DNA of 64,000 bases from Heteronotia binoei (Eukaryota), in the NCBI RefSeq assembly GCF_032191835.1, contig NC_083231.1:72168001-72232000 (forward strand), written 5' to 3'. A program made the translations under genes and the position numbers. Shown here in pieces: positions 3,362 to 59,909 of the stretch. The notes under the pieces are model-generated. The model saw only the letters and a program-made list of their open reading frames with translations. It was not told the origin of the DNA and did no database searches. Position 1 is the stretch's first letter; the number at the start of each line of letters is the position of its first letter.

Positions 3362-4170
3362 CAGAATCTACTTCCCTTCAGCTTCATTGGATGCCTTTGA
3401 GTTCTAGAATTTTGGAAGAAGAAAAAGTTCTCTTTGTCAACTCTCTCCATCCCATTAATAACTTTATAAACCTCTGTCATGTACTCCCCATAGTCATCGC
3501 TTTTCTAAACTGAAAAGTCCCTGACTCTCTAGTCTTTCCCCATAGGGAAGGTGCTCCAGCCCCCTAATCATCTTGATTGCTCTCTTCAGTACTTTTTCCA
3601 GCTCTGCAATGGCCTTTTTGAGATATGGTGACCAGAATCAAACACAGTAATCTAAATGAGGCTGTGCCATAGATCTATACAGAGACATCATAATGCCATC
3701 CATTTTCTTTTCAATCCCTTTCCTAATGAGGGTTGCTAGGTCCATTGGGCCAGCAGGTGAGGGATGGGAGTAAGCTTACCAGGAGCAGGGATGGGAGAAG
3801 CCAGAAATAAACTCAACATGCCTTCATCACACAGAAGTGATGTAGGCATATCAGGAATGTTGGGAATGATGCTCTGGTTTGTGGGCAAAACCTCTATAGT
3901 AGAATTAACTTATAACCATAGAATTTTACCCAAAAATTAGAGTGCTGCTGTTGATGTCATTGACATGCCTACATCATTTCCAGTTGACATGGGCACATTG
4001 CATTTATTTCTGGCTTCATGGTTTTTTTTGGGGGGGGAGGGGTAATTCCCTCCAGCAGCTCATCTGGCTGCTGGTCGATAGGCCCAAAACTGAGGGACCC
4101 CTGCTTGCACTGGGAGATTTGGCAACCGTATTCCTAATAATCCCCAGCATAGAGTTTGCCCTTTTCATCT
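3362..4170 (-). mobile_element. CR1 LINE 3' fragment interrupted by a hAT MITE
   Basis: Similar to the CR1 at 15.9-16.3 kb (ctcttcagtactttttccagctctgc..gagatatggtgaccagaa); CR1 sequence resumes at 4131 (ttcctaataatccccagcat). Confidence 0.7.
3728..4130. mobile_element. Non-autonomous hAT element (TAGGGTTGCCA family)
   Basis: Ends gagggttgcta / tggcaaccgta; perfect 8-bp TSD ttcctaat (3720-3727, 4131-4138); internal inverted repeats gaagccagaaataaa / tttatttctggcttc. Confidence 0.85.
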
Positions 4171-5628: not shown

Positions 5629-5751
5629 TATTAAATAAAATAAATAAAATAAAATAACGAATGCAAATGAAATACAAAAATAAGAAATATTTCTGTTTTC
5701 TGTGTTCTTTCAGAATATGTAGATGCACCTAGCTACTATATCAAAGATCGG

Positions 5752-5955
5752 AGAGGCTGTGAATCACTGGCAGAGCATCTGTTTGGGACGCAGAAGGTCC
5801 CAGGTTCAATCTCCAGCACCTCCAGTCCAAAGGAACAGGCAGTAGGTGAAAGACCTCTGCCTGAGACCCTGGAGAGCTGCTTCCAGTCTGAGTAGACAAT
5901 ACTGACTATGATGGATCAAGGGTCTGATTCAGTATAAAGCAGCTTCATGTATTCA
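5752..5955 (+). mobile_element. tRNA-derived SINE with CR1-like 3' tail
   Basis: A-box/B-box-like head (ggcagagcatctg..ggtcccaggttcaatctcc) followed by the tail gacaatactgac..gatggatcaagggtctgattcagtataaagcagcttc; mirrored at ~15085-15290. Confidence 0.6.
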
Positions 5956-6654
5956 GATCTGCCATTGTGTGAATCACTTACATAGAATAACTAGTACTTC
6001 CTAGGTGTGAGAGGCAGCAGTGGGGGAGGTCATTCTCATGCTAAAGCTATTTCAGTGTGGATTGGGGTTTGAACTGAAAGGTAGAACATATTTATACCAA
6101 CATTTGTAGGGTAGTTGTTTCTTCGAACCACACATGGTAAGATATATGTTTTCAATTTTCTATGTATGTTATATCATGGAAGTACAAAATCCATTTTAAA
6201 AGTCAAGAAGATCATGAATACAACATGAATAAGAGCAATAAAACATGAAAGCAATTTAAATGCCATGTCCATTTAAATTTGATGGCTTTTCCCTCTCCTC
6301 CCTGACCTATAATATTGGCAGGGGTCATTATGTAGAAAAATAGGTAGAGGAGCTCATCCAGGAATTGTTATGCAGCTGCACATACTATTCAATGGACAAG
6401 GAGGTGAATTCTCAGAAGGAGGAGGTGGAACTCTCATAAAGGTTCAGGAGCTGTGGTCCTGTGAGCTCTCACTGAATTTGAGGTCTGAATATTGGTGATG
6501 AGAATATTCAAACAGACAGAAAAAAGGCTCCTGCACAATAGTTAACTTATAGTCTTCCCTTGCATCCTTCATCACACAAGAGTGTTAGTTTAGATGACTT
6601 TAAACATTTATTATGGAAAATACATCATCAATCATTACTAGTGATGATGGTTAA

Positions 6655-6944
6655 GTAGAAGAAGAAGATGAAGAAGATATTGGATTTATATCCCGCCCTC
6701 TACTCTGAAGAGTCTCAGAGTGGCTCACAATCTCCTTTACCTTCTTCCCCCACAACAGACACCCTGTGAGGTGGGTGGGGCTGGAGAGGGCTCTCACAGC
6801 AGCTGCCCTTTCAAGGACAACCTCTGCCAGAGCTATGGCTGACCCAAGGCCATGCTAGCAGGTGCAAGTGGAAGAGTGGGGAATCAAACCCGGTTCCCCC
6901 AGATAAGAGTCCGCACACTTAACCACTACACCAAACTGGCTCTC
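6655..6944 (-). mobile_element. Squam3-like SINE, full length
   Basis: Head gagagccagtttggtgtagtggttaagtgtgcgg on the minus strand; L2-type tail with ctt repeats. Confidence 0.9.
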
Positions 6945-7574
6945 GTATATGTTTAGAGGCAGTATACTCCTGAATACCAGTTGCTAAAGGGCTGCAGCAG
7001 GAAAGCTGCTTAGCATCCTTGCCCTGGTCCTGTCAGAGCATCTCATGAGCAACTGCAGGAATCAGGATGCTGAACTAAATACAGTATTGTCTGATCATGC
7101 AGAGCTCTTTGTATGTCCATAATATTTATGATCCATTATTGTCTTCAAATTTATCATTCTACAGTAATGTAAACATATCTGAATAAACTTACCTTGTGTT
7201 CTCAACACATTTTAAACTTGTAGGTGATATGTTAATTTTGATAAATTAGCAGTGTCTCAAATTCTTCAGAACAGTTCTGAAATGGGAAATGGAATAAATT
7301 AAACAGTAGACATCTCACCTGCAATTAATGAGCTGTCTTTCACTTTCTAATAGAGCTGCTTCCTGCTGCACTGCATTAATTGCTCCAACAGGTTATAAAG
7401 ACGGGAATGATAATTCAGAAAAGAATGAAATCTGTGAATTAGATGGATTGGATAAAAAGCATTAATAACCTTTGCCTGTTTTGATCTAGAACTTCTTCTT
7501 TTCTAAGTTCTTTACACTAAATTGGAGTGTGTGAAGTTAGCCCTCAGTATTTCTTGGGGCAAGACCAAACTCAC

Positions 7575-13800: not shown

Positions 13801-14094
13801 CCAAACCAAATATATTTCAGGTTTATTTGCTCCTTCAAAGGATTTCTGTTGCAATCTTTTCAAATTCCATTCCAATTTTTTATGTATCAAATGTCTATTC
13901 GTGTTTGTAATATTGTAATATTCCTCATGATTTTCTTCTTCCCAAGTCTCTTTTTAAATTCTGTTTCCTTTTTCTTTATTTCATTTTGAATGTCCAATGT
14001 TTGTTTTTCTTTGTTCTTTTATCTTTATTATTCAATGTAATCAAGATACCTCTCATCACTGCTTTATATGCATCCCATTCAATGTCCTCATTAG
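10856..14094 (-). mobile_element. 5'-truncated L1-clade LINE (ORF2 with frameshifts, 3' UTR, AATAAA, short poly-A)
   Basis: Fragments WDAYKAVMRG, KNYRPISLLNNDY, KAFDNVNWDF, GTRQGCPLSPLLF, VKYLGV, PDLKLYHEA and a C-terminal CWK..H.WW motif; 3' end matches the copy at 61797. Confidence 0.92.
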
Positions 14095-15404
14095 GAGAGC
14101 CAGTTTGGTGTAGTGGTTAAGTGTGCGGACTCTTATCTGGGAGAACCGGGTTTGATTCCCCACTCTTCCACTTGCACCTGCTAGCATGGCCTTGGGTCAG
14201 CCATAGCTCTGGCAGAGGTTGTCCTTGAAAGGGCAGCTGCTGTGAGAGCCCTCTCCAGCCCCACCCACCCCACAAGGTGTCTGTTGTGGGGGAAGAAGGT
14301 AAAGGAGATTGTGAGCCACTCTGAGACTCTTCAGAGTAGAGGGCGGGATATAAATCCAATATCTTCTTCATCTTCTTCTTCTACTTAACCATCATCACTA
14401 GTAATGATTGATGATGTATTTCCCATAATAAATGTTTAAAGTCATCTAAACTAACACTCTTGTGTGATGAAGGATGCAAGGGAAGACTATAGGTTAACTA
14501 TTGTGCAGGAGCCTTTTTTCTGTCTGTTTGAATATTCTCCTCATCACCAATATTCAGACCTCAAATTCAGTGAGAGCTCACAGGACCACAGCTCCTGAAC
14601 CTTTATGAGAGTTCCACCTCCTCCTTCTGAGAATTCACCTCCTTGTCCATTGAATAGTATGTGCAGCTGCATAACAATTCCTGGATGAGCTCCTCTACCT
14701 ATTTTTCTACATAATGACCCCTGCCAATATTATAGGTCAGGGAGGAGAGGGAAAAGCCATCAAATTTAAATGGACATGGCATTTAAATTGCTTTCATGTT
14801 TTATTGCTCTTATTCATGTTGTATTCATAATCTTCTTGACTTTTAAAATGGATTTTGTACTTCCATGATATAACATACATAGAAAATTGAAAACGTATAT
14901 CTTACCATGTGTGGTTCGAAGAAACAACTACCCTACAAATGTTGGTATAAATATGTTTTACCTTTCAGTTCAAACCCCAATCCACACTGAAATAGCTTTA
15001 GCATGAGAATGACCTCCCCCACTGCTGCCTCTCACACCTAGGAAGTACTAGTTATTCTATGTAAGTGATTCACACAATGGCAGATCTGAATACATGAAGC
15101 TGCTTTATACTGAATCAGACCCTTGATCCATCATAGTCAGTATTGTCTACTCAGACTGGAAGCAGCTCTCCAGGGTCTCAGGCAGAGGTCTTTCACCTAC
15201 TGCCTGGTCCTTTGGACTGGAGGTGCTGGAGATTGAACCTGGGACCTTCTGCGTCCCAAACAGATGCTCTGCCAGTGATCCACAGCCTCTCCAATCTTTG
15301 ATATAGTAGCTAGGTGCATCTACAGATTCTGAAAGAACACAGAAAACAGAAATATTTGTTATTTTTGTCTTTCATTTACATTCGTTATTTTATTTTATTT
15401 AATA
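14095..15404. repeat. Arm B of the 1.3-kb inverted duplication (starts with a Squam3-like SINE, 14095-14383, plus strand)
   Basis: Reverse complement of 5629-6944. Confidence 0.95.
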
Positions 15405-15618: not shown

Positions 15619-17451
15619 TAAGAACATAAGAACATAAGAGTAGCCATGTTAGAGCAGGCCAATGGCCCATCCAGTCCAACACTCCGTGTCACACAGTGGC
15701 AAAAAATTTTTATATATACACACACACTGTGGCTAATAGCCACTGATGGACCTCTGCTCCATATTTTTATCTAAACCCCTCTTGAAGCTGGCTATGCTTG
15801 TGGCCGCCACCACCTCCTGTGGCAGTGAATTCCACATGTTAATCACCCTTTGGGTGAAGAAGTACTTCCTTTTATCCATTTTAACCTGTCTGCTCAGCAA
15901 TTTCATCGAATGCCCATGAGTTCTTGTATTGTGAGAAAGGGAGAAAAGTACTTCTTTCTCTACTTTCTCCATACCATGCATTATCTTGAAAACCTCTATC
16001 ATGTCACCCCGCAGTTGACGTTTCTCCAAGCTAAAGAGTCCCAAGCATTTCAACCTTTCTTCATAGGGAAAGTGTTCCAGCCCTTTAATCATTCTAGTTG
16101 CTCTTTTCTGGACTTTCTCCAATGCTATAATATTCTTTTTGAGGTGCGGCGACCAGAACTGCACACAGTATTCCAAATGAGACCGTACCATTGATTTATA
16201 CAGGGGCATTATGATACTGGCAGATTTGTTTTCAATTCCCTTCCTAATAATTCCCAGCATGGCATTGGCCTTTTTTATTGCAAACGCACACTGTCTTGAC
16301 GTTTTCAGTGAGTTATCTACCACGACCCCAAGATCTCTTTCTTGGTCAGTCTCTGCCAGTACCCACCCCATCAACTTGTATTTGTAGCTAGGATTCTTGG
16401 CCCCAATGTGCATTATTTTGCACTTGGCCACATTGAACCGCATCTGCCACGTTGACGCCCACTCTCCCAGCCTCAACAGATCCCTTTGGAGTTCCTCACA
16501 ATCCTCTCTGGTTCTCACCACCATGAACAATTTAGTGTCATCCGCAAACTTGGCCACTTCACTGCTCACTCCCAACTCTAAATCATTTATGAACAAGTTA
16601 AAGAGCATGGGACCCAGTACCGAGCCCTGCGGCACCCCACTGCTTACCATCCTCCACTGCGAAGACTGCCCATTTATACTCACTCTCTGCTTCCTATTAC
16701 TCAGCCAGTTTTTGATCCACAAGAGGACCTGTCCTTTTACTCCATGACTCTCAAGCTTTCTAAGGAGCCTTTGATGAGGAACTTTATCAAAAGCTTTCTG
16801 GAAGTCAAGGTAAACAACATCTATCGGGTCTCCTTTGTCCACATGTTTGTTCACCCCCTCAAAGAAATGTAACAGGTTAGTGAGGCAAGATCTTCCCTTA
16901 CAGAACCCATGCTGAGTCTTCCTCAATAACCCGTGTCCATCAATGTGCCTACTCATTCTGTCCTTGATAATGCTTTCTACCAACTTTCCCGGTATTGAAG
17001 TCAGACTGGCTGGCCTGTAATTTCCCGGATCTTTTCTGGAACCCTTTTTAAAGATGGTGGTGACATTTGCTACCTTCCAGTCCTCAGGAACGGAGGCAGA
17101 TTTCAATGAAAGATTACAGATCTTTTTTAGAAGATCCACAAGTTCAACTTTGAGTTCTTTCAGAACTCCCGGATGTATGCCATTCGGACCCGGTGACTTA
17201 TTAGTTTTTAATTTGTCTATCAGTTGTAGGACCTCCTCTTTTGTCACCTCAATCTGACTCAGGGCTTTCAACACCCCTTCCAAAATTAGTGGTTCTGGGG
17301 CGGGCAAAAAGTTCTCATCTTCCACAGTGAAGACGGAGGCAAAAAATTCATTCAGCTTCTCAGCCATTTCCCTATCCTCCTTCAGTAATCCTTTTACCCC
17401 ATGGTCATCCAAGGGCCCCACTGCCTCCCTGGCTGGTTTCCTACTTCTAAT
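15619..17451 (-). mobile_element. 5'-truncated CR1 LINE with an uninterrupted RT frame (ORF 15733-17526)
   Basis: PGNYRPASLTSIPGK, QHGFCKGRSCLTNL, YLDFQKAFDKVPH, SGVPQGSVLGPMLF, FADD, ERDLGV; 3' tail of (ttcttatg)n octamer repeats typical of CR1. Confidence 0.95.
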
Positions 17452-18744
17452 GTGATGTATTAAATTATGCAAAATTATGCATTGGGACTCAACCCACAGT
17501 AAACTATACACAATAGTACAAACCAAAGTCCCCCAATAATTTATCCAAGTAACTTTGTGAAGCCTTTCATAACAGTGCTACCCTATAGTCTGCACATAAA
17601 AACCCTCTTGAATAATTCAGTTTTGCACTGTTTGTGGAAAACCATGGGAGTGGGAGCTTTCTTGGCTTTCTTAGACAGGCTATTTCACATGGTGGGGCCA
17701 CAGCGGAGATGGCATGTGTGTGGGCAGTTGTTGACTTTGCTCATTTCCAAGTTAATTGAAATATATAATCTAAATGTTTGCACTGATAATTAGCAACCTC
17801 AAGTAGTTATATATAACATTAAGCACTCCATATCAGTACCCAATTCCAGTAAAGCTGGAACCCCAGCTTTAAAGCTTTGTGGTCCAAGCTGTGCATGTTG
17901 TTACGCTGAAGGATATAAATGAGGCAAAGTGATGGGGGAGAGAAAAAGCAAGAAAAGTATAGTTACCTATTTGTTGATGGTCCAGGTGCAGACTCAATCA
18001 CTGAAGAATGGTCTAGGCAAATCATTCAAAAGAGAATATAATGTTGACATTACATGTCATTACATGTCACCACATGCTCAGCCCTACACAAGCAATAGCC
18101 ACTTTGGGGATAGATTCTGGCCTTACTTTTTAAAAAATACGTTCAATTTTTTTATTTTGTTTTAAAAGATATAGAAATAAAAAGGAAAATAAAAAGTAAT
18201 TAGAGAAGTAACAAAATATATACATGTACATAAACACCCCCTTCTACAATTTCAAAACAGCTCATACACTAACAATATCTTCAATCATTATCTTAACAAT
18301 ACAAATCAACTCCAATCTTCAAACACATTGATTTCTTTTAAACACAGTTATTTCCATAAATATTATCAAAATTTTCATCTGCCATTTCTATTTAAACTCA
18401 AAATCAACAGGCACAATCTATTAAAATATAAACATTTTTTCTAAAAGGGGGACACCAATAATTCTGGCCTTATTTTTGACAGGCAAGTAACAAGATATTT
18501 TTCCTTCCTGTCTCAGAAGATGGTGTATGTGTGATTTCAGGACCTAATAACATTTAAATGAGGTAAAGGTTTCTGGATGTGGAGTGGATTTAATCTTAGT
18601 TGCTCATGACAGTCATTTCCAAATGTCATAACTCTGAAAATAGTGGTAGTTAGTCCAAGGATAGAAACCTTGTTGGCTCCAGTTAATGGGATTAACTGGA
18701 CAGTCCTACTTCTGTTGACTCTTCTGCTTCTGCTGTGGTAACAA

Positions 18745-27463: not shown

Positions 27464-27599
27464 NNNNNNNNNNNNNNNNNNNNNNNNNNNNNNNNNNNNN
27501 NNNNNNNNNNNNNNNNNNNNNNNNNNNNNNNNNNNNNNNNNNNNNNNNNNNNNNNNNNNNNNNNNNNNNNNNNNNNNNNNNNNNNNNNNNNNNNNNNNN
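27464..27599. other. Assembly gap (136 N)
   Basis: Run of N. Confidence 1.
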
Positions 27600-28229: not shown

Positions 28230-28905
28230 TAGGGTTGCAAATCCCCAGTTGGGGGCAGGGGATTCTCCTGTTTGGAGGCCCTCCTCCCACTTCAGGGTCA
28301 TCAGAAGGCCAGTCAGGGGAGGAAATGTTTGCTGGGCACTCCATTATTCCCTATGGAGACTGATTCCCATAGAGTATAATGGAGAATAATCCATGGGTAT
28401 CTGGAGCTCTATGGGATTTGTTTGTTGAGGTAGAAGCATCAAATTTACAGCTCACCATCCAGTGCCTCTCCTCAAAACATCCTTCAAGTTTCAAAAAGAG
28501 TGGGCCAAAGAGTCCACTTCTATGAGCCTAAAAAGAAGGTGCCCCATTCTTCATTATTTCCAATGGAGAGAAAGCATTTAAAAGGTGTGCAGTCCTTTTA
28601 AATGTGATGTCCAAACTCCCTTTGGAGTTCAATTATGCTTGTCACAACATTGCTCCTGGCTCTACCCCCAAAGTCCCCAGATATTTTATTTATTTGTTTA
28701 CTTGCTTTAATTGATATGCTGCCCACTCCGCGAGCGGACTCTGGGTGGCTAACAGTCATAATAAAACAATGTAAATACAATTATAAAAGAATAAAACACA
28801 TATAAACAATTTAAAGCTACATTATTAGGTGCTATAAAAAGATTTCATAACAAAGGCGGCTTCTCCAATCTCAATTCTCTTGAATCTCAGTTCTCTTGAA
28901 CCTTA
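28230..28905. mobile_element. Non-autonomous hAT element (inverted relative of 59075) containing an L2-tail insertion (~28685-28860)
   Basis: Left end tagggttgcaa, decayed right end gaacctta; perfect TSD attgaaag (28222-28229, 28906-28913). Confidence 0.8.
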
Positions 28906-30688: not shown

Positions 30689-31604
30689 TCATAGGAGCAG
30701 GACCCGGGCGGCTAACCACTCCAGGCCGCTTGCAAAGTTCTTAGCGTACACCGGATTCCCAGGAAAGAACCCCCTAGCGGATTCCCTGGTTTCGGGGGAA
30801 CTGCAGAGATCCGTGGCTCGGTCAGGATGAAACCTGTCTAGCCTCGTGATCAACTTCCTCCCCATTAGTAACTCAGCAGGGCTTAACCCGGTGACGGGGT
30901 TGGGGGTGATTCTGTTATTGAATAGAAAGGCCGCCAGGCGGTGGTCCCAATCTCCCTGTACAATGCGCCCCAGGGCCTCTTTAATGGTGCGCACCATGCG
31001 CTCTGCTTGGCCGTTGGTGGCTGGATGGAAGGGGGCGGACCGAATGTGCTGTATGAGGTATCTATTCAAGAACTTCTGGAATTCCCGGGAGGTGAAAGCG
31101 GTCCCATTGTCCGTGACGAGGGTATCGGGAATCCCATGTGTGCAAAAGACCCTACGCAAGGCTCTGACTGCCGCCGCAGTGGAGGTTGAAGCTACGAGAA
31201 TAACTTCCAACCACTTGATGCATGCATCTACAAGAATAAAGAATATTTGGCCCTGGTATGGCCCCGCAAAGTCTAGGTGTAACCGGGACAATGGCCTCCT
31301 ATTGAACTCCCAGCGGTGTACAGGGGCACTGGGCGGATCAGGCTGGGACTCTTGGCAGGCACCTTCAAATCCACCCTTCAATCTCTTCGACCATTCCCGG
31401 CCACTATACATAGCTGCATGCCAGGGCCTTCATCCGCACCATTCCCGGATGTGTTTTGTGTAGGGCTTCCAGCACTTGTTTCCGCAATGGGTGGGGGGGA
31501 CCACCACCCTGCTTCCCCAGAGAAGGCACCCCTTGTGCATGGACAGTTCTTCTCTGCATAATGCGTATGCCCTGAATTCTGTGTCTTGTTTGCCGGCGGG
31601 CCAT
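30689..31604 (-). pseudogene. Gypsy integrase remnant (HHCC and DDE core)
   Basis: LHKTHPGMVRMKALA; LHLDFAGP, VTDNGTAFTS, APFHPATNGQAERMV; frameshifted. Confidence 0.9.
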
Positions 31605-41019: not shown

Positions 41020-41766
41020 TGCTTGCATTGATTCCATTGTCTGGTTGGGGGTGAGCTCTGCCCAGGTAAAGTTTCCCAGTGAGTTTGATGTCACTAGCTT
41101 GTTCATGAGCCATTTCATTGACTCTCATAACTGCAGCTGTCTTTTCCGGAGAGGGCACTAGGGAGACCTTTTTTTGGGGGGGGGGGTTTCCATAATTCCA
41201 GAAAGGTAATCTGCCTACAACTTGGATACATTGTAAACAAGCAGGCAGCATGGTAAAGTTCCTTGTGTGTTTTGTGTGTGTAGCTTGCTGGGGGGGGGGC
41301 ACACTATACTCTTTTGAACCTGTACCTGACATTTCCCCAAAAAACATTTTCCTAGCTTGATCTTAGTCCTGTCAGGTTTGCACTGCCACAGTGCGACTGG
41401 TTCTGTTGGGTACACTGCACTGGTTCTGCTGTGAGTTTGATGTCTGTTCTATACACTACTGAACCTCCTGAACCTGCCCTTGTTATTTCCCCAGAAAACA
41501 CTTTCCTGGGAGTACTTTCTTTGTGGGACTGTAACTCATACCCTGTATATCCAATCCACACCAAACCTGGAGAGCAGGTTAAGGAGATTCTCTGAGTTTG
41601 GTGTCTCCAACATGTCAGGGGCCATCCTACCACAGCATGAACGTCATGACATTAACCAGTTCATTTAGCGCAAAAATGTTTGTGATAATTTGTGGTTCAC
41701 AAACAATGCATGCCACGAACCACGAACTAGTCCAAACCACATTTTCCTGGTTTGTGCCCATCCCTA
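41020..41766. mobile_element. Degenerate DNA-transposon-like repeat, related to ~51200-51805
   Basis: 41480-41620 aligns with 51290-51430; both copies end in a gtgcccatcccta-like terminus. Left end not found. Confidence 0.45.
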
Positions 41767-47938: not shown

Positions 47939-49941
47939 ATTTTGTCCTTGGCCTGAAAGTTAGTGGCAGATGAAAGAATATTGTGAAATTATGACCATTC
48001 CTATTACCAACTGTTGGAAGTAACATGTTTGCAGTGACATGACCAACAGCCCTGACATATCCCTGGATATTTGGCTGGGAAACAGCAGTGGAGCTGGGTG
48101 GGAATTCCAAAATGAAGTAGTATAACAAGTCCCTTTAAAAAACACGGAACTTTGCATCAAGTGACTAGACTAATTTACCAAGTACAAGGGGAAACATTCC
48201 CATGTATATTGACTTATCTTTAGGAAAGACTGGAAAGTGAAAATTGCATATTCATAGTTGCAGAGGATTGTCCTAAATGTAGCAATAGGTTTCTGATCTA
48301 TGATGGTTGGGTGGGAGGAAATGAGGGGTTGGACCCACTGTAAATTTTCCTTTGGCAAAATTGAACTTTCCTTCTTCCTCCCAATGCCGCTCACTGACCT
48401 CCACAAAGTGCTGCTCTTAGGGTTCAGGGGACTTGAAGGGAATAGGAATTGGTGGACATTGCCAGTTTAGTCTGGATCCAACCAGATGGCCTGTTGAGTC
48501 TGATATTCAATTGCATCTGTTGTACAAAATCAAACATGCAAAATGACTTATACAGAATAGCAAGCAAGCATTATGATGAATGGTGACCAAAAAAAGTAAG
48601 TAACTATGTGAAGTAGTAAACCACTCAGATCTTTGACTGAGGAGCTCTGAGGTCTGTTTTGGTAGGACAACCTGATCTGAATGACAGTAATAGTGTGGAA
48701 GGGGGAAAGGAGGGGAGCCATGGCACAATCTCACATGTGGAGTGAAATTTAGTGCATTACATTTGTAAGAATAAGGCCAACAAGCTTTAATAACTAATTT
48801 ATAAAAGCCATATGGAACACACAAAATGTGTAAAATCGAACTGGAAAATCAACTAAAAGGAAACTAGAAATATGTGCTAAAACCACATTTAATAAAAGTT
48901 AAAGCATTATTATCTTAAAGGATGTTTTCTCTTTGGCAAACATGCTCTTCAGTTTTTCTGAAGAGTTCCCATAAGTTTTAATGACCAAGTAAGTATTCAT
49001 ATTTCTAATATGTTTTCCTAGGTTAATAACCTGTATGCATAATCAACTACTTCATTTGAAATGCTAACAGGGATCCTTGTTTTACTGATCTCTTTCCATC
49101 ATGTTAAAAATGTTGCGAGTTTTTTCTTGGTTGATATCACTTACTAATTATAACAGTGTGGATGTTTAGAGTTTAGTACAGTATCATGAAGGATTTATCT
49201 GTCAGATTCTCATTCCCTTTTGCTAACCTGTCATTGTACTTTTGTTACCCAAAGAGTCAGTTTCCTATTGGACTAGTGTCTCAGTGCATATAGGAAGAAT
49301 GTTCCCTGGGACTATGCTGGTTTGCCCCCAAAACAATGTCTTGATTGTTGTTTCAGGGATGAACAAAGATCTTGAGAAACCTTGATGAGATTGCTGGGGG
49401 TTGATCTATAGGTGTTAATATTCTTCATGTGATCCTCAAATTCAGAATGGGAGAAACTACTGGGTTGTATGAATAGCATTAAGTATTTCATAACTAGGGT
49501 AGATGGCCAAGGGGAAGCATGACTGGAAGTGGATGAGGTTAATCTCAGGTGAGGTAATGTTTTCTTGGGAGAACCATTGTTTTAAATTATGCATCTCTTT
49601 AGGGTGGGGGTAAGGTCATTAGCTTGTCAGCCTCTATGTTGCACCTACCAAAATACTTTCCCAGACTTGTCTCTGGCCAGCATCCATTTTGGTTGTATCA
49701 GATTCATTTTGGTTTCACTGTTAGGCCAGGCAGTGTCCACCGCTGGCCCACTGCCTGCTCTCCACAGTGATCAGAGGAGTGCCATGACGAGACGTGGCAC
49801 CACTTGCTTCACAAGGGCCCGGGATTCTTCTAAGTTGTTTGAAGAGTGTGCTGGAGGAGGCTTCTCCCCCCCCTCACTTCTGGGCCCTTGTGAAGCAGGT
49901 AGGGCCAAGCCTTGTCCCTCTTCTGATCACATGGGGGGGGA

Positions 49942-51178
49942 TAGGGTTGCCAAGTCCCATTTTTAAAATATCTGGGGACTTTGGGGGTGGAGCCAGGAGA
50001 CTTTGGGGGTGGAGCCAGGAGACACTGGGGTGGAGCTAGGGGGAGGGGGGAAACGGCGCCGGGGAGCGTCGCTGCGCTGCTGTGGCTGCTCCTCCAAGAT
50101 GGGCTCAGGCTGGGCCCATCTCGGAGGAGCAGCTGCCGGGGGGGGGGGGCGTCGCGGCGGCGTCCTGCACTCCGCCTCTGCATTGGAATGGGGGGGTGGA
50201 GGTGGGCCAGGAGCGTGGCGAGCCGTGAGTCCGGGTCTTAGAGGGGCCCGGATTCGCGGCTCGCCATGCTCCTGGCCCGCCTCCACCCTCCCCTTCTCTG
50301 CTTTGGCTGCTCCTCCGAGATGGGCTCAGCCTGGGCCCATCTCGGAGGAGCAGCTGCCGGGGGGGCGGCGCGGCAACGTCGCGTGCTGCGCTCAGCCTCT
50401 GGGTTGGAATGGGGGGGTGGAGGCGGGCCAGGAGCGTGGCGAGCCGCGAGTTCGGGTCCTAGAGGGGCCCAGATTCGCGGCTCGCCATGCTCCTGGCCCG
50501 CCTCCACCCTCCCCTTCTCTGCTTTGGTTGCTCCTCCGAGATGGGCTCAGCCTGGGCCCATCTCGGAGGAGCAGCTGCCGGGGGGCGGCGCGGCAGCGTC
50601 GCGCGCTCCGCTCAGCCTCTGGGTTGGAATGGGGGGGTGGAGGCGGGCCAGGAGCGTGGCGAGCCGCGAGTTCGGGTCCTAGAGGGGCCCGGATTCGCGG
50701 CTCGCCATGCTCCTGGCCCGCCTCCACCCTCCCCTTCTCTGCTTTGGCTGCTCCTCCGAGATGGGCTCAGCCTGGGCCCATCTCGGAGGAGCAGCTGCCG
50801 GGGGGGCGGCGCGGCAACGTCGCGTGCTGCGCTCAGCCTCTGGGTTGGAATGGGGGGGTGGAGGCGGGCCAGGAGCGTGGCGAGCCGCGAGTTCGGGTCC
50901 TAGAGGGGCCCAGATTCGCGGCTCGCCATGCTCCTGGCCCGCCTCCACCCTCCCCTTCTCTGCTTTGGTTGCTCCTCCGAGATGGGCTCAGCCTGGGCCC
51001 ATCTCGGAGGAGCAGCTGCCGGGGAGGGAGGGGGTGGCAGCAGCGCGGCTGCGTCGCCCGCTCTGGGATGGGGTGCCCGCCGTTTCTCCCCTTCCCCCGC
51101 TTCTGTTTTTGGGGGGAGCAGGGGAAGAGGGTGGAAAACCTGGCATCCCCCGCCAGAGCGGGAGGGTTGGGAAGGCTA
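49942..51178. mobile_element. Non-autonomous hAT element carrying a GC-rich hairpin tandem array
   Basis: Left end tagggttgccaag shared with the 59075 copy; right end ttgggaaggcta (59075 copy: ttgggaagccta); perfect TSD ggggggga (49934-49941, 51179-51186). Confidence 0.85.
50085..51024. repeat. CpG-rich tandem array, ~4.25 units of 220/221 bp
   Basis: Unit starts at 50085, 50306, 50527, 50747 and 50968. Confidence 0.97.
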
Positions 51179-52716
51179 GGGGGGGAAGGTGGAGCACAAC
51201 ATGCTGCTGCGCTATGCTGGGGAAGTCCAAATTGTGGCACCCCAAAGAAGGTACCCCCAGGAAAGTGCTTTCTGAGAATGACAGATGGTAATTTCCTCCG
51301 AAAGCATTTTCCTGAGAGTGCCTTCTTTGGAGGGAGCATAACTCAGATCTCATAAATCCAATCCTCTCCAAACTTGGAGGGCAGATAAAGGAGATTCATT
51401 TGGAGATCCCCTCAAATTTAGTGTCTTCAGCTTGCACAGGATTCATTCTATACATTGCTGAACTTCCTGAACCTGTGCCTGTTAAAATTTTGACAGATGC
51501 AGGTGCAGGAGGTTTAGGAGTGTACAGAATAAATCCTTTACAAACTAGATATATCAAAGTTTCAGGGGACCTCTGCAAGATGTTCCTCTTCATGCCTTCC
51601 AAGTTCTGACTCCTCTATTGCGTTGAAGTTTTGTAAACATTTAGAGTGAGTGGAGAAAGTCTGTCTGGAACTGTATCCATTCATGACCACCACAAACTGG
51701 AAAGTTCATGCTGGTTGACTCTCATGAACTTCACTTCATGTACCATGAACTGCCCAAAATTCATTCTGAACTTTAGTTTGTGAGCCAATTCATGCCTATT
51801 CCTAGTTGTAAAATGAATTCTCCCTAGCTGCCACCTGTGTGGGGGGAATAAAAACTGGGTAGAGGCAAACCCACCTGGGAAAAAAATCTAGTGTAAGCCA
51901 GTTGTCTTCATCTCATTCTAACTACTATGAAGCATAATTTACAGATGTAGCAAAATGAAATAGCAGAATTTCAAGGTTTTATGGGATATGCCATATAGAT
52001 TCCAGAGGGGTTATTCTTAATGGTCCTTCATGTAAAAAATCGCTTAGAAATAATAAAAAGCCCACCCGGGAGTAAAGTTCTAGTGCAGCCCTTTGCATGC
52101 TGAGCTAATCTTCAGGTTTCAGTAAATTATTAATGTGAGAGAAATTTGGGGTAAAAAGTAATCTGGGCCATTGCATTGAAATGTCTTCTCCAGTTAAACT
52201 GCATGTTTGTAAAAGCCTATAATGATTGTTTTAAGTGCTTGTATTAACACAGGCAATCATTATAGGCGTTTTCAAACTTGCATTTAAAGTGCATTACAAC
52301 AAAATGGCCCTGATCTATAGTAGTCTCATACAGCTGTTGTTTTATATAACTAGGAAACAAATATTGTAGGGGGACATACATATTCACATCCATATTACAA
52401 GAAAGATGCACATTCTGATGAGAAATGCATTGGCTACTTTGCATAACAATGCAGGTGAAATCTTTATCTGCACACACAGTTTCAATCCAGTAATGGAATT
52501 TACACATGGAAAATTCCATAGGAGTAGTTTAGTTAATCTGCTGCAGCCAAAATAACAGATAATCTTGTTATGCCTTAAAGACTAACAGATTTATTATGGC
52601 ATGGTCTTTCATAAGTCACAATTCACATGGGCAGATACATAAAAATTACATTCAATCAATAGTTTACGCACAAACAGAAAAACAAACATTGCTGTGCAGG
52701 GTGTTATTACAATGAG

Positions 52717-52897
52717 CAGGGCTTTTTTTGTAGCAGGAAGTCCTTTGCATATTAGGCCACATCCTTCTTATGTAGCCAACCTCCAAGAGCTTACAGGGCT
52801 CTTATTACAAGGTCTACTGTAAGTTCTAGGAGGACTGGCTATATCAGGGGTGTGTGGCCTAATATGCACAGGAGTTCCAGCTATATAAAAAGCCCTG
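52717..52897. mobile_element. hAT MITE (CAGGGCTTTTT family), long imperfect palindrome
   Basis: TIR cagggctttt / aaaagccctg; TSD acaatgag / acaatggg (7/8). Confidence 0.8.
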
Positions 52898-52952: not shown

Positions 52953-53086
52953 NNNNNNNNNNNNNNNNNNNNNNNNNNNNNNNNNNNNNNNNNNNNNNNN
53001 NNNNNNNNNNNNNNNNNNNNNNNNNNNNNNNNNNNNNNNNNNNNNNNNNNNNNNNNNNNNNNNNNNNNNNNNNNNNNNNNNNNNNN
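52953..53086. other. Assembly gap (134 N)
   Basis: Run of N. Confidence 1.
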
Positions 53087-56320: not shown

Positions 56321-57940
56321 GTGGAAGGGCATTTTCCAGCACCTCTGAAAGAGGCTGTGGTCCGCCCTCTATTGAAAAAACCAACGTTAGATCCGGCCGA
56401 ATTGACACACTATCGGCCAGTCTCGAATTTACCCTTTTTGAGTAAACTCATTGAGAGGGCAGTGGTGTTGCAGTTGCAGAGTTTTCTGGAGGATGCTTCC
56501 GTTCTCGACCCCCATCAGTCCGCTTTCTGTCCGGGTCACGGGACGGAGACAGTGCTGGTTGCTTTGATGGATGATCTCCAGCGGCATCTGGATTGAGGCG
56601 GCTCAGCGGTGCTGGTGTTGTTAGACCTATCAGCAGCATTCAATATGGTTGACCACCAGCTGCTGACTTGTCATCTTGCTGATGTGGGGATTCAGGGGTT
56701 GGCCCTACAATGGCTCTCCTCGTTCCTTGATGGTCGGGGACAAAGGGTGGCGATTGGGGGTGAGTTGTCCCAGAGGCACACACTTGATTGTGGGGTGCCC
56801 CAGGGGGCAGTTCTTTCCCCAATGTTGTTTAACATCTACATGCGCCCCCTTGCCCAGATTGCTCAGAGATATGGGCTGTGTTGCCACCAGTACGCTGATG
56901 ACACCCAGCTCTATCTATTCATGGACGTACGGCCTGACTGTGTCCCAGAAAACCTGGACCGGGCATTACAAGCTGTGGCTAGATGGCTCAGGCTGAGTAG
57001 GTTGAAACTAAATCCAGCAAAGACAGAGGTCCTTTGCTTGGGTTGCCGTGGTCTGGGGGGGAAGGGAATTCCCCTTCCAGCTCTTGACGGTGTGCCACTG
57101 ACAGTGGCGCACAGGGTCAGGAGCTTGGGGGGTACTACTTGAGCCCGCCTTAACTATGGAGGCTCAGGTAGCAGCCACTGCTAAGTCCGCATTCTTTCAT
57201 CTTAGGTGGGCGAGGCAGCTGGCTCCCTTCCTGGAGCAGGATGATCTGGCAACAGTGATCCATGCAACGGTCACCTCAAGGTTGGATTACTGTAATGTTC
57301 TCTACATGGGGCTGCCCCTGTGCTGAACCCGGAAGTTGCAGCTAGTGCAGAATGCCGCCGCTCAGCTGTTATTAGGGCTCCCTAGATGGGAGCACATTCA
57401 GCCGGGCCTTTGGGGACTGCATTGGCTGCCAATAATATACCGAGTCCGGTACAAGGTGCTGTTTATTACCTTTAAAGCCCTATATGGCCTAGGACCTGCC
57501 TACCTTAGGGACCATCTCTTCCCATATATCCCCAGAGAGTACTGCGATCTAGCTCTCGAAACCTGCTTATAATCCCCGGGCCAAAGGAGGCCCGGTTGAC
57601 CAGGATAGGGCCTTCTCAATTACAGCCCCTTGCTGGTGGAACCAGTTACCGGAAGAGGTCAGGGCCCTGCAGGATATTGGACAGTTCCGCAGGGCCTGCA
57701 AGACCGTCCTCTTCCGGTTGGCTTATAACTGACCGGTACCGAAACACCAAAATAGTAAGGAAGTCTATAGATAGCACACTGATATGGATATTAATGTTTT
57801 AACTATGTAATTTATTATTGTATTTTAATTCTGAATTTTATTGTTAGAACTTTTATGCTGTGAGCTGTCCTGAGCCCGCTTCGGTGGGGTAGGGCGAGAT
57901 ATAAATCAAATCAAATAAATAAAAATAAAATAAAAAAATA
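56321..57940 (+). mobile_element. 5'-truncated L2 LINE (RT with stops and frameshifts)
   Basis: HYRPVSNLPFLSKLIER, HQSAF.PGHGTETVL, LLDLSAAF..VDH, GVPQGAVLSPMLFNIYM, YADD, LNPAKTE; tail gggcgagatataaat plus an A-rich microsatellite. Confidence 0.92.
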
Positions 57941-59074: not shown

Positions 59075-59909
59075 TAGGGTTGCCAAGTCCAATTCAAGAA
59101 AAATCTGGGACTTTGGGGGCGGAGCCAGGAGACTTTGGGGGGTGGAGCCAGGAGACATTGGGGGTGGAGCCAGGAACAAGGATGTGACAAGCATAATTGA
59201 ACTCCAAGGGAGTTCTGGCCATCACATTTAAAGGGGCAGCACACCTTTTTAAATGCCTTTCTTCCATAGGAAATAATGAAGGATAGGGGCACCATATTTT
59301 GGGGCTCATAGAATTGGACCTCTGGTCCAATCGTTTTGAAACATGGCGGGTATTTTGGGGAGAGGCACTAGATGCTATACTAAAAATTTGGTGCATCTAC
59401 CTCAAAAAATAGCCCCCCAGAGCCTCCAATACCTGCAGATCAATTCCCCATTATTCCCTATGGGAATCATTCTCCATAGGGAATAATAGAGTGCCCAGTA
59501 GACATTTCCCTCCCCCCCATGCTTTCTAAAGCGGGGGGGGGAGGGCCTCCAAACCAGGGAATCCCCTGCCCCCTTCCTCTCTCACAACCACAAATACTTA
59601 CTAGATCTTGTTCCTGCAGAACTTTACTTGCTGTGAAAATGAAAGCAAAAGAAAGGGAGGGGCCGTTCTCCATCGAAACTGTTACTGACCCTTTCCCATG
59701 AAGCCCTTCCTGTTTCCTGTTTCCTGCTCAGTCTTAAAGGCACACATTTTACAAACAGATCAGTTTGCAGTTTTCTAAACCTGCAGGAGCTCTACAACTA
59801 CATGATGACTGTGGGGGTGGGGCTTCCACTGCTGGCCAGCTGGCTGGGGGTGGGGAGAAGCCTGTAAAAACAGGGGCTCCCCCCTGGGACCTGGGGATTG
59901 GGAAGCCTA
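59075..59909. mobile_element. Non-autonomous hAT element, 835 bp
   Basis: Ends tagggttgcca / tgggaagccta; perfect TSD gtcctgga; three subterminal ggggtggagccagga-type repeats. Confidence 0.9.

What the first reader, a model, noticed from the sequence alone, without database searches (positions are those of the whole stretch)
50306..50514. Hairpin mismatches are almost all G-U compatible on the plus strand
Seen: in the 50-position stem of unit 2 there are 43 Watson-Crick pairs, 6 G-T (G-U in RNA) and 1 C-A, and that C-A is C-G in alternate units. The small stem, the first stem and the diverged unit 1 add further G-T pairs and only one more A-C. Strand-symmetric transition decay should give G-T and A-C about equally, and several changes are not at CpG. 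Inference: either selection keeps a plus-strand RNA or ssDNA fold, or C-to-T deamination was strongly strand-biased (exposed non-template strand, APOBEC-like editing). The number of independent sites is small.
Basis: partly seen in the sequence, partly recalled or inferred. Interest (0 to 1): 0.7.

Follow-up and report, generated by a model that had tools for sequence, protein, structure and literature searches.

The report
G:T-skewed hairpin minisatellite inside a transposon
The hairpin mismatches do nearly all read G:T on the plus strand, but they come from only about a dozen independent mutations in a young, transposon-borne palindromic tandem repeat, so the skew is weak evidence and no structured RNA is needed to explain it.

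Summary
In unit 2, the 50-pair stem (50411-50513) has 43 Watson-Crick pairs, 6 G:T and 1 C:A. That C:A is C:G in units 1 and 3.

The 4.3 units of the 221-bp array are copies (unit 2 = unit 4), so the independent transition sites number only 10-13 G:T against 2 A:C. The two-sided binomial p is 0.039 on a strict count and 0.007 on a liberal one. About 13 hairpins in this window could have been flagged, and one of the others shows the opposite skew (2:8).

Other inverted repeats in the window are balanced: 32:33 for short hairpins and 170:156 for long-range pairs.

None of the 74 pairs shows a compensatory change. The minus strand still folds at about -100 kcal/mol. Rfam gives only sub-threshold generic hairpin hits on both strands. 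No sequencing run was listed, so expression could not be tested.

The array is the interior of a 1,237-bp hAT-like non-autonomous transposon (49942-51178) with an 8-bp target duplication. The base of the big palindrome reuses the transposon's own subterminal repeat motif.

Best reading: neutral decay of young DNA palindromes, with sampling noise and perhaps a mild strand bias. Strong plus-strand deamination, or selection on a plus-strand fold, remain possible but have no independent support. The same scan has noted similar two-hairpin GC-rich minisatellites elsewhere in this genome (unchecked).

The parts
49934..49941 (.). Left copy of the 8-bp direct repeat GGGGGGGA flanking the element (candidate target-site duplication)
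   Evidence: Read directly. It is identical to 51179-51186 and lies immediately outside the TAGGG... terminus.
49942..51178 (+). Element A, a 1,237-bp non-autonomous hAT-like transposon that carries the array
   Evidence: The left terminus TAGGGTTGCCAAGTCC is shared exactly with element B at 59075. The left ~110 nt and part of the right end align to B. B's inverted relative C (28230-~28700) has the matching right terminal inverted repeat. An 8-bp flanking duplication is present.
49977..50040 (+). Three 22-bp subterminal repeats of the transposon
   Evidence: TRF: period 22, 3.0 copies. The motif GGGGTGGAG..CCAGGAG recurs in the 5' arm of each big palindrome.
50077..51053 (+). GC-rich tandem array: 221-bp unit, 4.3-4.4 copies, with a 441-bp super-unit duplicated once
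   Evidence: TRF gives periods of 221 and 441 at 95% match. Units start at 50074, 50295, 50516, 50736 and 50957. Unit 2 is identical to unit 4. nhmmer extends unit 5 to 51053. GC is 0.72 and CpG observed/expected is 0.67.
50306..50354 (+). Small palindrome of unit 2 (24+24 nt). Its equivalents are 50085-50133, 50527-50575, 50747-50795 and 50968-51016.
   Evidence: the repeat finder I14-I18. Mismatch table. Folds.
50356..50410 (+). Spacer of unit 2: CpG-dense, with a G-run. It is the fast-diverging part of the unit.
   Evidence: Between units 1 and 2 there are 13 differences in 55 spacer positions, against 7 in 154 palindrome positions (Fisher p=1.5e-4). The spacer also has indels and transversions.
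50411..50513 (+). Big palindrome of unit 2 (50 pairs, 3-nt centre), the stem the finding is about. Its equivalents are 50190-50292, 50631-50733 and 50852-50954.
   Evidence: (I4, I6, I7, I11). It has 43 Watson-Crick, 6 G:T and 1 C:A pairs.
51057..51163 (+). Imperfect right-terminal hairpin of the transposon, homologous to 59490-59575 of element B
   Evidence: Folds (-79.5 kcal/mol on the plus strand, -71.4 on the minus). Alignment.
51179..51186 (.). Right copy of the 8-bp direct repeat GGGGGGGA
   Evidence: Read directly.

Best explanation
The stretch is DNA-level repeat architecture, not an RNA gene. A non-autonomous hAT-like transposon (49942-51178) has a 221-bp unit in its interior that was amplified in tandem. 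Each unit holds two palindromes of 24 bp and 50 bp. The big palindrome is built on the transposon's own subterminal repeat motif plus that motif's inverted copy.

The palindromes were perfect or nearly so when they formed, and have since picked up about a dozen transitions. Most of those happen to be C-to-T (or A-to-G) on the plus strand, which reads as G:T in a plus-strand fold. With 12-15 independent sites and many hairpins available to pick from, sampling noise is enough to explain the skew. The mild strand asymmetry common in vertebrate DNA may add to it. No function of the fold has to be assumed.

Shown here: the counts, the copy structure of the array, the transposon context and the balanced background. 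Inferred: that the ancestral palindromes were perfect, the direction of the changes shared by all units, and neutrality.
For: - Array structure and identical units.
- About 13 hairpins in the window range from 2:8 to 7:2 and sum to 32:33. Long-range inverted pairs give 170:156.
- None of 74 pairs has a compensatory change.
- Both strands fold far beyond shuffled controls, and the minus strand keeps 82-88% of the plus-strand energy in the big stem.
- Rfam has nothing at gathering score, and the weak hits fall on both strands.
- Transposon context: 8-bp flanking duplication, a terminus shared with B and C, and the subterminal motif inside the stem (7 matches against 0 expected).
- Replication template switching can create and repair perfect stems without selection (PMC8794818).
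Against: - The skew is nominally significant, and stronger at non-CpG sites (7:0).
- All five mismatch sites shared by every unit are G:T.
- The palindromes diverge about five times more slowly than the spacer between units 1 and 2. A purely neutral view has to put this down to a hypermutable, slippage-prone, CpG-dense spacer, or to patchy homogenisation between units.
- CpG observed/expected of 0.67 in a genome at about 0.1 means the array is either very young or unmethylated in the germline. The latter would fit a transcribed, CpG-island-like state.
Confidence: 0.55

Rival explanations
1. Real strand-biased mutation. The G-rich plus strand is often single-stranded, either as the non-template strand of a transcribed, R-loop-prone CpG-island-like array or as a hairpin-forming replication template. 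Its cytosines therefore deaminate faster, giving C-to-T on the plus strand only.
For: - Changes polarised among units are 5 C>T to 2 G>A on the plus strand.
- The shared site 50510 is polarised as C>T by the transposon motif.
- The shared site 50488 is a CpG-to-TpG change.
- Mismatches cluster toward the loop of the big stem (one-sided p=0.02), where a hairpin breathes.
- GC skew is +0.11, GC is 0.72 and CpG observed/expected is 0.67 over 50001-51000.
- Vertebrate genes show [C>T]/[G>A] above 1 on the non-template strand near CpG-island starts, and [A>G]/[T>C] above 1 along transcripts. Both are attributed to ssDNA and R-loops (PMC2927911).
Against: - Neighbouring hairpins (15:9) and the unpaired spacer (about 2 C>T to 3 G>A) show no clear plus-strand bias.
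- I assume published asymmetries are modest ratios that would not by themselves give 10:2; that magnitude was not read from the paper.
- The sequence contexts of the C>T sites are mixed (TC, CC, GC, AC and CpG), so there is no AID/APOBEC-type signature.
- No evidence of transcription could be obtained.
Confidence: 0.25
2. Selection on a plus-strand fold. The array is transcribed from the plus strand (or exposed as plus-strand ssDNA), and the long hairpins serve as siRNA/miRNA-like precursors or protein-binding structures. A:C-forming changes are removed and G:U-forming ones are tolerated.
For: - All five old (shared) mismatch sites are G:T, and both A:C sites are young and unit-specific.
- Palindromes are about five times better conserved than the spacer, and carry no transversions.
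- The plus strand folds 32 kcal/mol better per unit.
- G:U content is an accepted indicator of the reading direction of structured RNAs (PMC1892782).
Against: - No compensatory pair in 74.
- The minus-strand hairpins still fold at about -100 kcal/mol, so single A:C mismatches cost little.
- No Rfam family reaches threshold.
- No relatives were found in any collection searched.
- The sequence is transposon-derived and very young.
- From general knowledge, 50-bp perfect GC-rich dsRNA is not a typical vertebrate miRNA precursor.
Confidence: 0.15

Closest known systems
Non-autonomous hAT-superfamily DNA transposons (MITE-like) with internal tandem repeats
   Same: 8-bp flanking duplication, a TAG... 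terminus shared with other copies in the window, subterminal short repeats, no transposase gene and a variable interior.
   Different: The right terminal inverted repeat of this copy is degenerate. The interior is a GC-rich array of long palindromes, not the ~330-bp interior seen in relatives B and C.
Palindromic or quasipalindromic minisatellites shaped by replication template switching (PMC8794818, PMC7202029)
   Same: Near-perfect inverted repeats with a short centre. Perfect stems can be explained at the DNA level without selection on an RNA.
   Different: Here there is no sign of arm-to-arm correction since the units diverged: 7 one-sided changes and 0 two-sided.
Transposon-derived hairpin RNA precursors (MITE-derived miRNA or endo-siRNA loci)
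   Same: Transposon origin, long hairpins and a tandem cluster. G:U pairs favour one strand.
   Different: No expression data, no family match and no covariation. The stems are far longer and more perfect than typical animal pre-miRNAs.
Transcription-associated mutational strand asymmetry at CpG-island starts (PMC2927911)
   Same: Excess of C>T and A>G on one strand in a GC-rich, CpG-rich, positively GC-skewed kilobase.
   Different: No gene or transcription start site is known here, and the flanking hairpins and the spacer do not share the bias.

Membership tests
hAT-like non-autonomous DNA transposon | 8-bp target-site duplication flanking the element | tested here: met
   GGGGGGGA lies at 49934-49941 and at 51179-51186, directly outside the termini. 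Caveat: it is a low-complexity G-run in a G-rich context.
hAT-like non-autonomous DNA transposon | Terminal inverted repeats | tested here: inconclusive
   The left terminus is identical to element B. Relative C has a good right inverted terminus. Element A's own right terminus matches its left at only about 11 of 17 positions.
hAT-like non-autonomous DNA transposon | Other dispersed copies of the same family | tested here: met
   Copies are B at 59075-~59575, C at 28230-~28700 (minus strand), and a related ~400-bp element at 3728-4130.
hAT-like non-autonomous DNA transposon | An autonomous partner encoding a hAT transposase | not tested
   No transposase ORF was looked for beyond the ten largest ORFs. 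Those gave reverse transcriptase and integrase domains only.
Minisatellite / tandem repeat | Head-to-tail copies of a unit of 10-several hundred bp | tested here: met
   TRF: period 221, 4.3 copies, 95% matches. nhmmer agrees.
Structured non-coding RNA / miRNA precursor | Match to a curated RNA family at its gathering score | tested here: not met
   The best Rfam hits score 37-53 bits against gathering scores of 90-100, and fall on both strands.
Structured non-coding RNA / miRNA precursor | Covariation (compensatory changes) supporting the stems | tested here: inconclusive
   None of 74 pairs changes on both sides. Only three distinct units at 95-99% identity were available, so there is no power.
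Structured non-coding RNA / miRNA precursor | A transcript from the predicted strand | not testable with these tools
   The look-up of sequencing runs listed no run, so read laying could not be used.
AID/APOBEC-type DNA editing footprint | Clustered same-strand C>T in a preferred dinucleotide context | tested here: not met
   Contexts of the polarised or likely C>T sites are mixed: TC (50452), CC (50238, 50510), GC (50528) and CpG (50203, 50226, 50488). Two G>A changes lie on the same strand.
CpG island (Gardiner-Garden criteria) | GC above 0.5, CpG observed/expected above 0.6, length above 200 bp | tested here: met
   For 50001-51000, GC is 0.72 and CpG observed/expected is 0.67. The window background is about 0.1. 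Methylation state is unknown.

The most novel reading that the evidence does not exclude
A transposon-borne palindromic minisatellite in a gecko genome is a plus-strand hairpin-RNA (endo-siRNA or miRNA-like) cluster, or a strand-specifically extruded ssDNA structure. In this reading the G:U excess, the slow divergence of the stems relative to the spacer, and the retained CpGs all reflect constraint on the fold. The similar two-hairpin GC-rich minisatellites noted elsewhere in this genome would then form a family of such loci.
Probability: 0.12. Interest if true: 0.55.

Novelty: new member of a known kind. Interest (0 to 1): 0.2.

Why it matters
If the skew held across many independent copies, it would assign a strand to a whole class of transposon-derived hairpin arrays in squamate genomes. 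It would then point either to a new source of hairpin RNAs or to a strongly strand-specific mutational process at structure-forming DNA. As it stands, it mainly shows that G:T against A:C counts in tandemly copied hairpins must be reduced to independent events and compared with the local background before they mean anything.

Tried and rejected
- **Rfam.** A scan at a permissive E-value over 48-53 kb gave only generic sub-threshold miRNA-hairpin hits on both strands.
- **Public collections.** Exact-pattern scans of the metagenome collection (two scans), the viral collection and the bacterial/archaeal genome collection used stem words. They returned nothing, or 19-22-nt chance matches in bacterial contigs with no second arm.
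- **Other copies in the window.** blastn and nhmmer with the unit found none outside the array.
- **Coding reading.** ORF 50003-51355 (450 aa) is open across all three unit frames but has no Pfam match. I take it for a GC-composition effect.
- **Regional strand bias.** Background hairpins and inverted transposon pairs are balanced.
- **ADAR-type A>G editing via an RNA copy.** Rejected for the unit-specific sites, which are C>T against the other units.
- **Arm-to-arm correction as the reason for slow stem divergence.** Not supported: 0 two-sided changes against 7 one-sided.
- **Polarising element A's flank substitutions with relatives B and C.** Given up. C lacks the left part, and the right part is only about 65% identical.
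- **Earlier findings by sequence.** The look-up was blank, which means nothing.

Full report
**What is there**

The window is transposon-rich vertebrate DNA. CpG observed/expected is about 0.1. The large ORFs carry reverse transcriptase and integrase domains. Notes from other agents of this scan call the genome a gecko; I did not check that.

Between 50077 and about 51053 lies a GC-rich tandem array with a 221-bp unit and 4.3-4.4 copies. TRF also reports a 441-bp period. Laying the units side by side shows why: unit 2 (50295) and unit 4 (50736) are identical, and units 3 and 5 are near-identical. A two-unit block was therefore duplicated. Unit 1 (50074) is the diverged edge unit.

Each unit has three parts:
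- a 24+24-nt palindrome (unit 2: 50306-50354);
- a CpG-dense spacer of about 55 nt containing a G-run (50356-50410);
- a 50+50-nt palindrome with a 3-nt centre (50411-50513).

**Check of the observation**

An RNA fold of the plus strand can only display G:U pairs. I therefore re-counted with an ungapped alignment of each arm to the reverse complement of its partner, which treats G:T and A:C alike, and confirmed the result with the count of structure pairs.

In unit 2, the 50-pair stem has 43 Watson-Crick pairs, 6 G:T and 1 C:A. The C:A (50453-50471) is C:G in units 1 and 3. Unit 1 adds three more G:T pairs. The first stem adds G:T pairs and one A:C (50096-50122, unit 1 only). Many of the sites are not at CpG.

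The plus strand folds better than the minus strand as RNA: -196.3 against -164.3 kcal/mol per unit.

**How many independent events**

Counting each site once gives the following.

| Stem | G:T sites | A:C sites |
|---|---|---|
| Big palindrome | 4 shared by all units, 1 shared by units 2-4, 3 private to unit 1, plus 1 loop-proximal pair | 1 |
| Small palindrome | 1 shared, 1 in units 3 and 5, plus 2 edge pairs | 1 |

The total is 10:2 on a strict count (two-sided p=0.039) or 13:2 on a liberal one (p=0.007).

Subsets of the strict count:

| Subset | G:T : A:C |
|---|---|
| Sites that vary among units, polarised by the other units | 5 C>T : 2 G>A on the plus strand (p=0.45) |
| Sites shared by all units | 5:0 (p=0.06) |
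| CpG sites | 3:2 |
| Non-CpG sites | 7:0 |

Mismatches in the big stem cluster toward its loop (one-sided p=0.02).

**Background**

| Comparison set | G:T : A:C |
|---|---|
| Twelve other short inverted repeats in the window | 32:33 |
| Four of those, nearest the array (49-53 kb) | 15:9 |
| Long-range inverted transposon pairs | 170:156 |

Individual hairpins range from 2:8 (3797-4017) to 7:2 (52717-52897).

There is no regional bias that the array merely shares. Equally, a reader had about 13 hairpins to choose from in this window alone.

**Tests of the RNA reading**

- None of the 74 pairs changes on both sides. Five change on one side and stay paired as G:U, and two break. With three distinct units at 95-99% identity this test has almost no power.
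- Rfam yields only generic miRNA-hairpin hits far below gathering scores, and on both strands.
- The minus-strand big hairpin still folds at -96 to -104 kcal/mol as RNA, against -117 to -122 for the plus strand. As DNA the two strands differ by only 2-9 kcal/mol. A single A:C in such a stem barely matters to its stability, so purifying selection "to keep the fold" would be weak unless a perfect duplex is needed.
- G:U content is an accepted cue for the reading direction of structured RNAs (RNAstrand, PMC1892782). That method presupposes a conserved structure seen in an alignment of diverged sequences.

**Tests of the mutation reading**

Vertebrate transcribed DNA shows [A>G]/[T>C] above 1 on the non-template strand. 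Near CpG-island starts it also shows [C>T]/[G>A] above 1. Both are ascribed to single-stranded exposure and R-loops (PMC2927911).

The array has the right composition for this: GC 0.72, CpG observed/expected 0.67 and GC skew +0.11. The polarised changes are mostly plus-strand C>T.

Three things count against it. After re-gapping the alignment by eye, the unpaired spacer shows about 2 C>T to 3 G>A. The neighbouring hairpins are not clearly biased. The contexts of the C>T sites are mixed, so there is no AID/APOBEC-type signature. Lizard APOBEC1 is reported to act on retroelements (PMC4866542), but this is a DNA-transposon interior.

**What the thing is**

The array sits inside a 1,237-bp element (49942-51178) flanked by the 8-bp direct repeat GGGGGGGA (49934-49941 and 51179-51186).

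- Its left terminus and about 110 nt of subterminal sequence, including three 22-bp repeats, are shared with element B at 59075.
- Part of its right end, including an imperfect terminal hairpin, is also shared with B.
- B's inverted relative C (28230-~28700) carries the matching right terminal inverted repeat.
- B and C have a ~330-bp AT-richer interior and no array.

This fits a non-autonomous hAT-like transposon, as an earlier first-reader note on this window proposed (s1-345470). Element A's own right terminus is degenerate.

The motif GGGGTGGAG(0-6 nt)CCAGGAG occurs seven times in the window, with none expected by chance. It appears only in the subterminal repeats of A and B and in the 5' arm of every big palindrome. 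The big palindrome was therefore built from the transposon's own subterminal repeat and its inverted copy. This also polarises one shared mismatch (50414-50510) as a C>T change in the 3' arm.

**An observation that remains open**

Between units 1 and 2 the spacer differs at 13 of 55 positions, and the two palindromes together at 7 of 154 (p=1.5e-4). The spacer changes include indels and transversions, while the stem changes are all transitions.

Arm-to-arm correction cannot explain the slower divergence, because no two-sided change exists. Three explanations remain open: a slippage-prone, CpG-dense spacer; patchy homogenisation between units; or constraint on the palindromes.

**What could not be done**

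- No sequencing run was listed for the region, so expression, strand and genomic copy spectrum could not be examined.
- Scans of the metagenome, viral and prokaryotic collections gave only 19-22-nt chance matches.
- No other copy of the unit exists in the window.
- The two N runs (27464-27599 and 52953-53086) were left alone.

**Verdict**

The counts are right and the skew is real in this locus. It rests on about a dozen events in one young, transposon-borne palindromic minisatellite.

| Reading | Estimated probability |
|---|---|
| Neutral decay, with sampling noise and perhaps ordinary mild strand asymmetry | about 0.55 |
| A strong plus-strand-specific deamination process | about 0.25 |
| Selection on a plus-strand fold | about 0.15 |

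The scan has noted several similar two-hairpin GC-rich minisatellites elsewhere in this genome (unchecked). That makes the decisive genome-wide count straightforward for anyone with the assembly.

Noticed in passing
window 49934-49941 and 51179-51186: An identical 8-bp direct repeat, GGGGGGGA, lies immediately outside the element's termini. It is consistent with a hAT-type target-site duplication, though it is low-complexity.
   Followed up: partly
window 50193-50213, 50414-50434, 50634-50654, 50855-50875 versus 49984-50021 and 59139-59154: The base of the 5' arm of each big palindrome contains the transposon's subterminal 22-bp repeat motif with a 5-nt insert (7 matches, 0 expected). The palindromes therefore derive from the transposon's own ends.
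   Followed up: partly
window 50356-50410 versus 50135-50189: The spacer diverges about five times faster than the palindromes between units 1 and 2. It has indels (a G-run 5 nt longer, and a 5-nt deletion) and transversions, while stem changes are all transitions. The cause is unresolved.
   Followed up: partly
window 28230-28700 (minus strand) and 59075-59575: Two further copies of the same transposon family have a ~330-bp interior and no array. C keeps the right terminal inverted repeat, B is truncated at its right end, and C lacks the left subterminal part.
   Followed up: partly
window 3728-4130: A ~400-bp element with related inverted termini (3 mismatches each) has an internal hairpin with the opposite skew, 2 G:T to 8 A:C on the plus strand.
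   Followed up: no
window 5641-6947 and 14092-15401: A 1.3-kb inverted duplication at 98.6% identity, with arm differences of 3 G:T-type, 8 A:C-type and 5 transversions. An earlier first-reader note (s1-345578) also covers it.
   Followed up: no
window 50003-51355 (+): A 450-codon open frame runs through the whole array and so through all three frames of the unit. It has no Pfam match and is most likely an effect of 72% GC.
   Followed up: partly
window 51242-51330 and 51438-51537; 41447-41526: Two further hairpins lie just right of the element. They share short similarity with 41447-41526, which suggests another small palindromic repeat family.
   Followed up: no
window 15733-17526 (-), 30689-31411 (-), 56609-57142 (+): ORFs with reverse transcriptase (597 aa and 177 aa) and integrase-core (240 aa) domains. 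These are retroelement remnants, and the region 30-33 kb has CpG observed/expected of about 0.6.
   Followed up: no
window 49767-49930: An imperfect ~164-bp hairpin directly left of the element (arms 49767-49820 and 49882-49930), with balanced mismatches (2:2).
   Followed up: no
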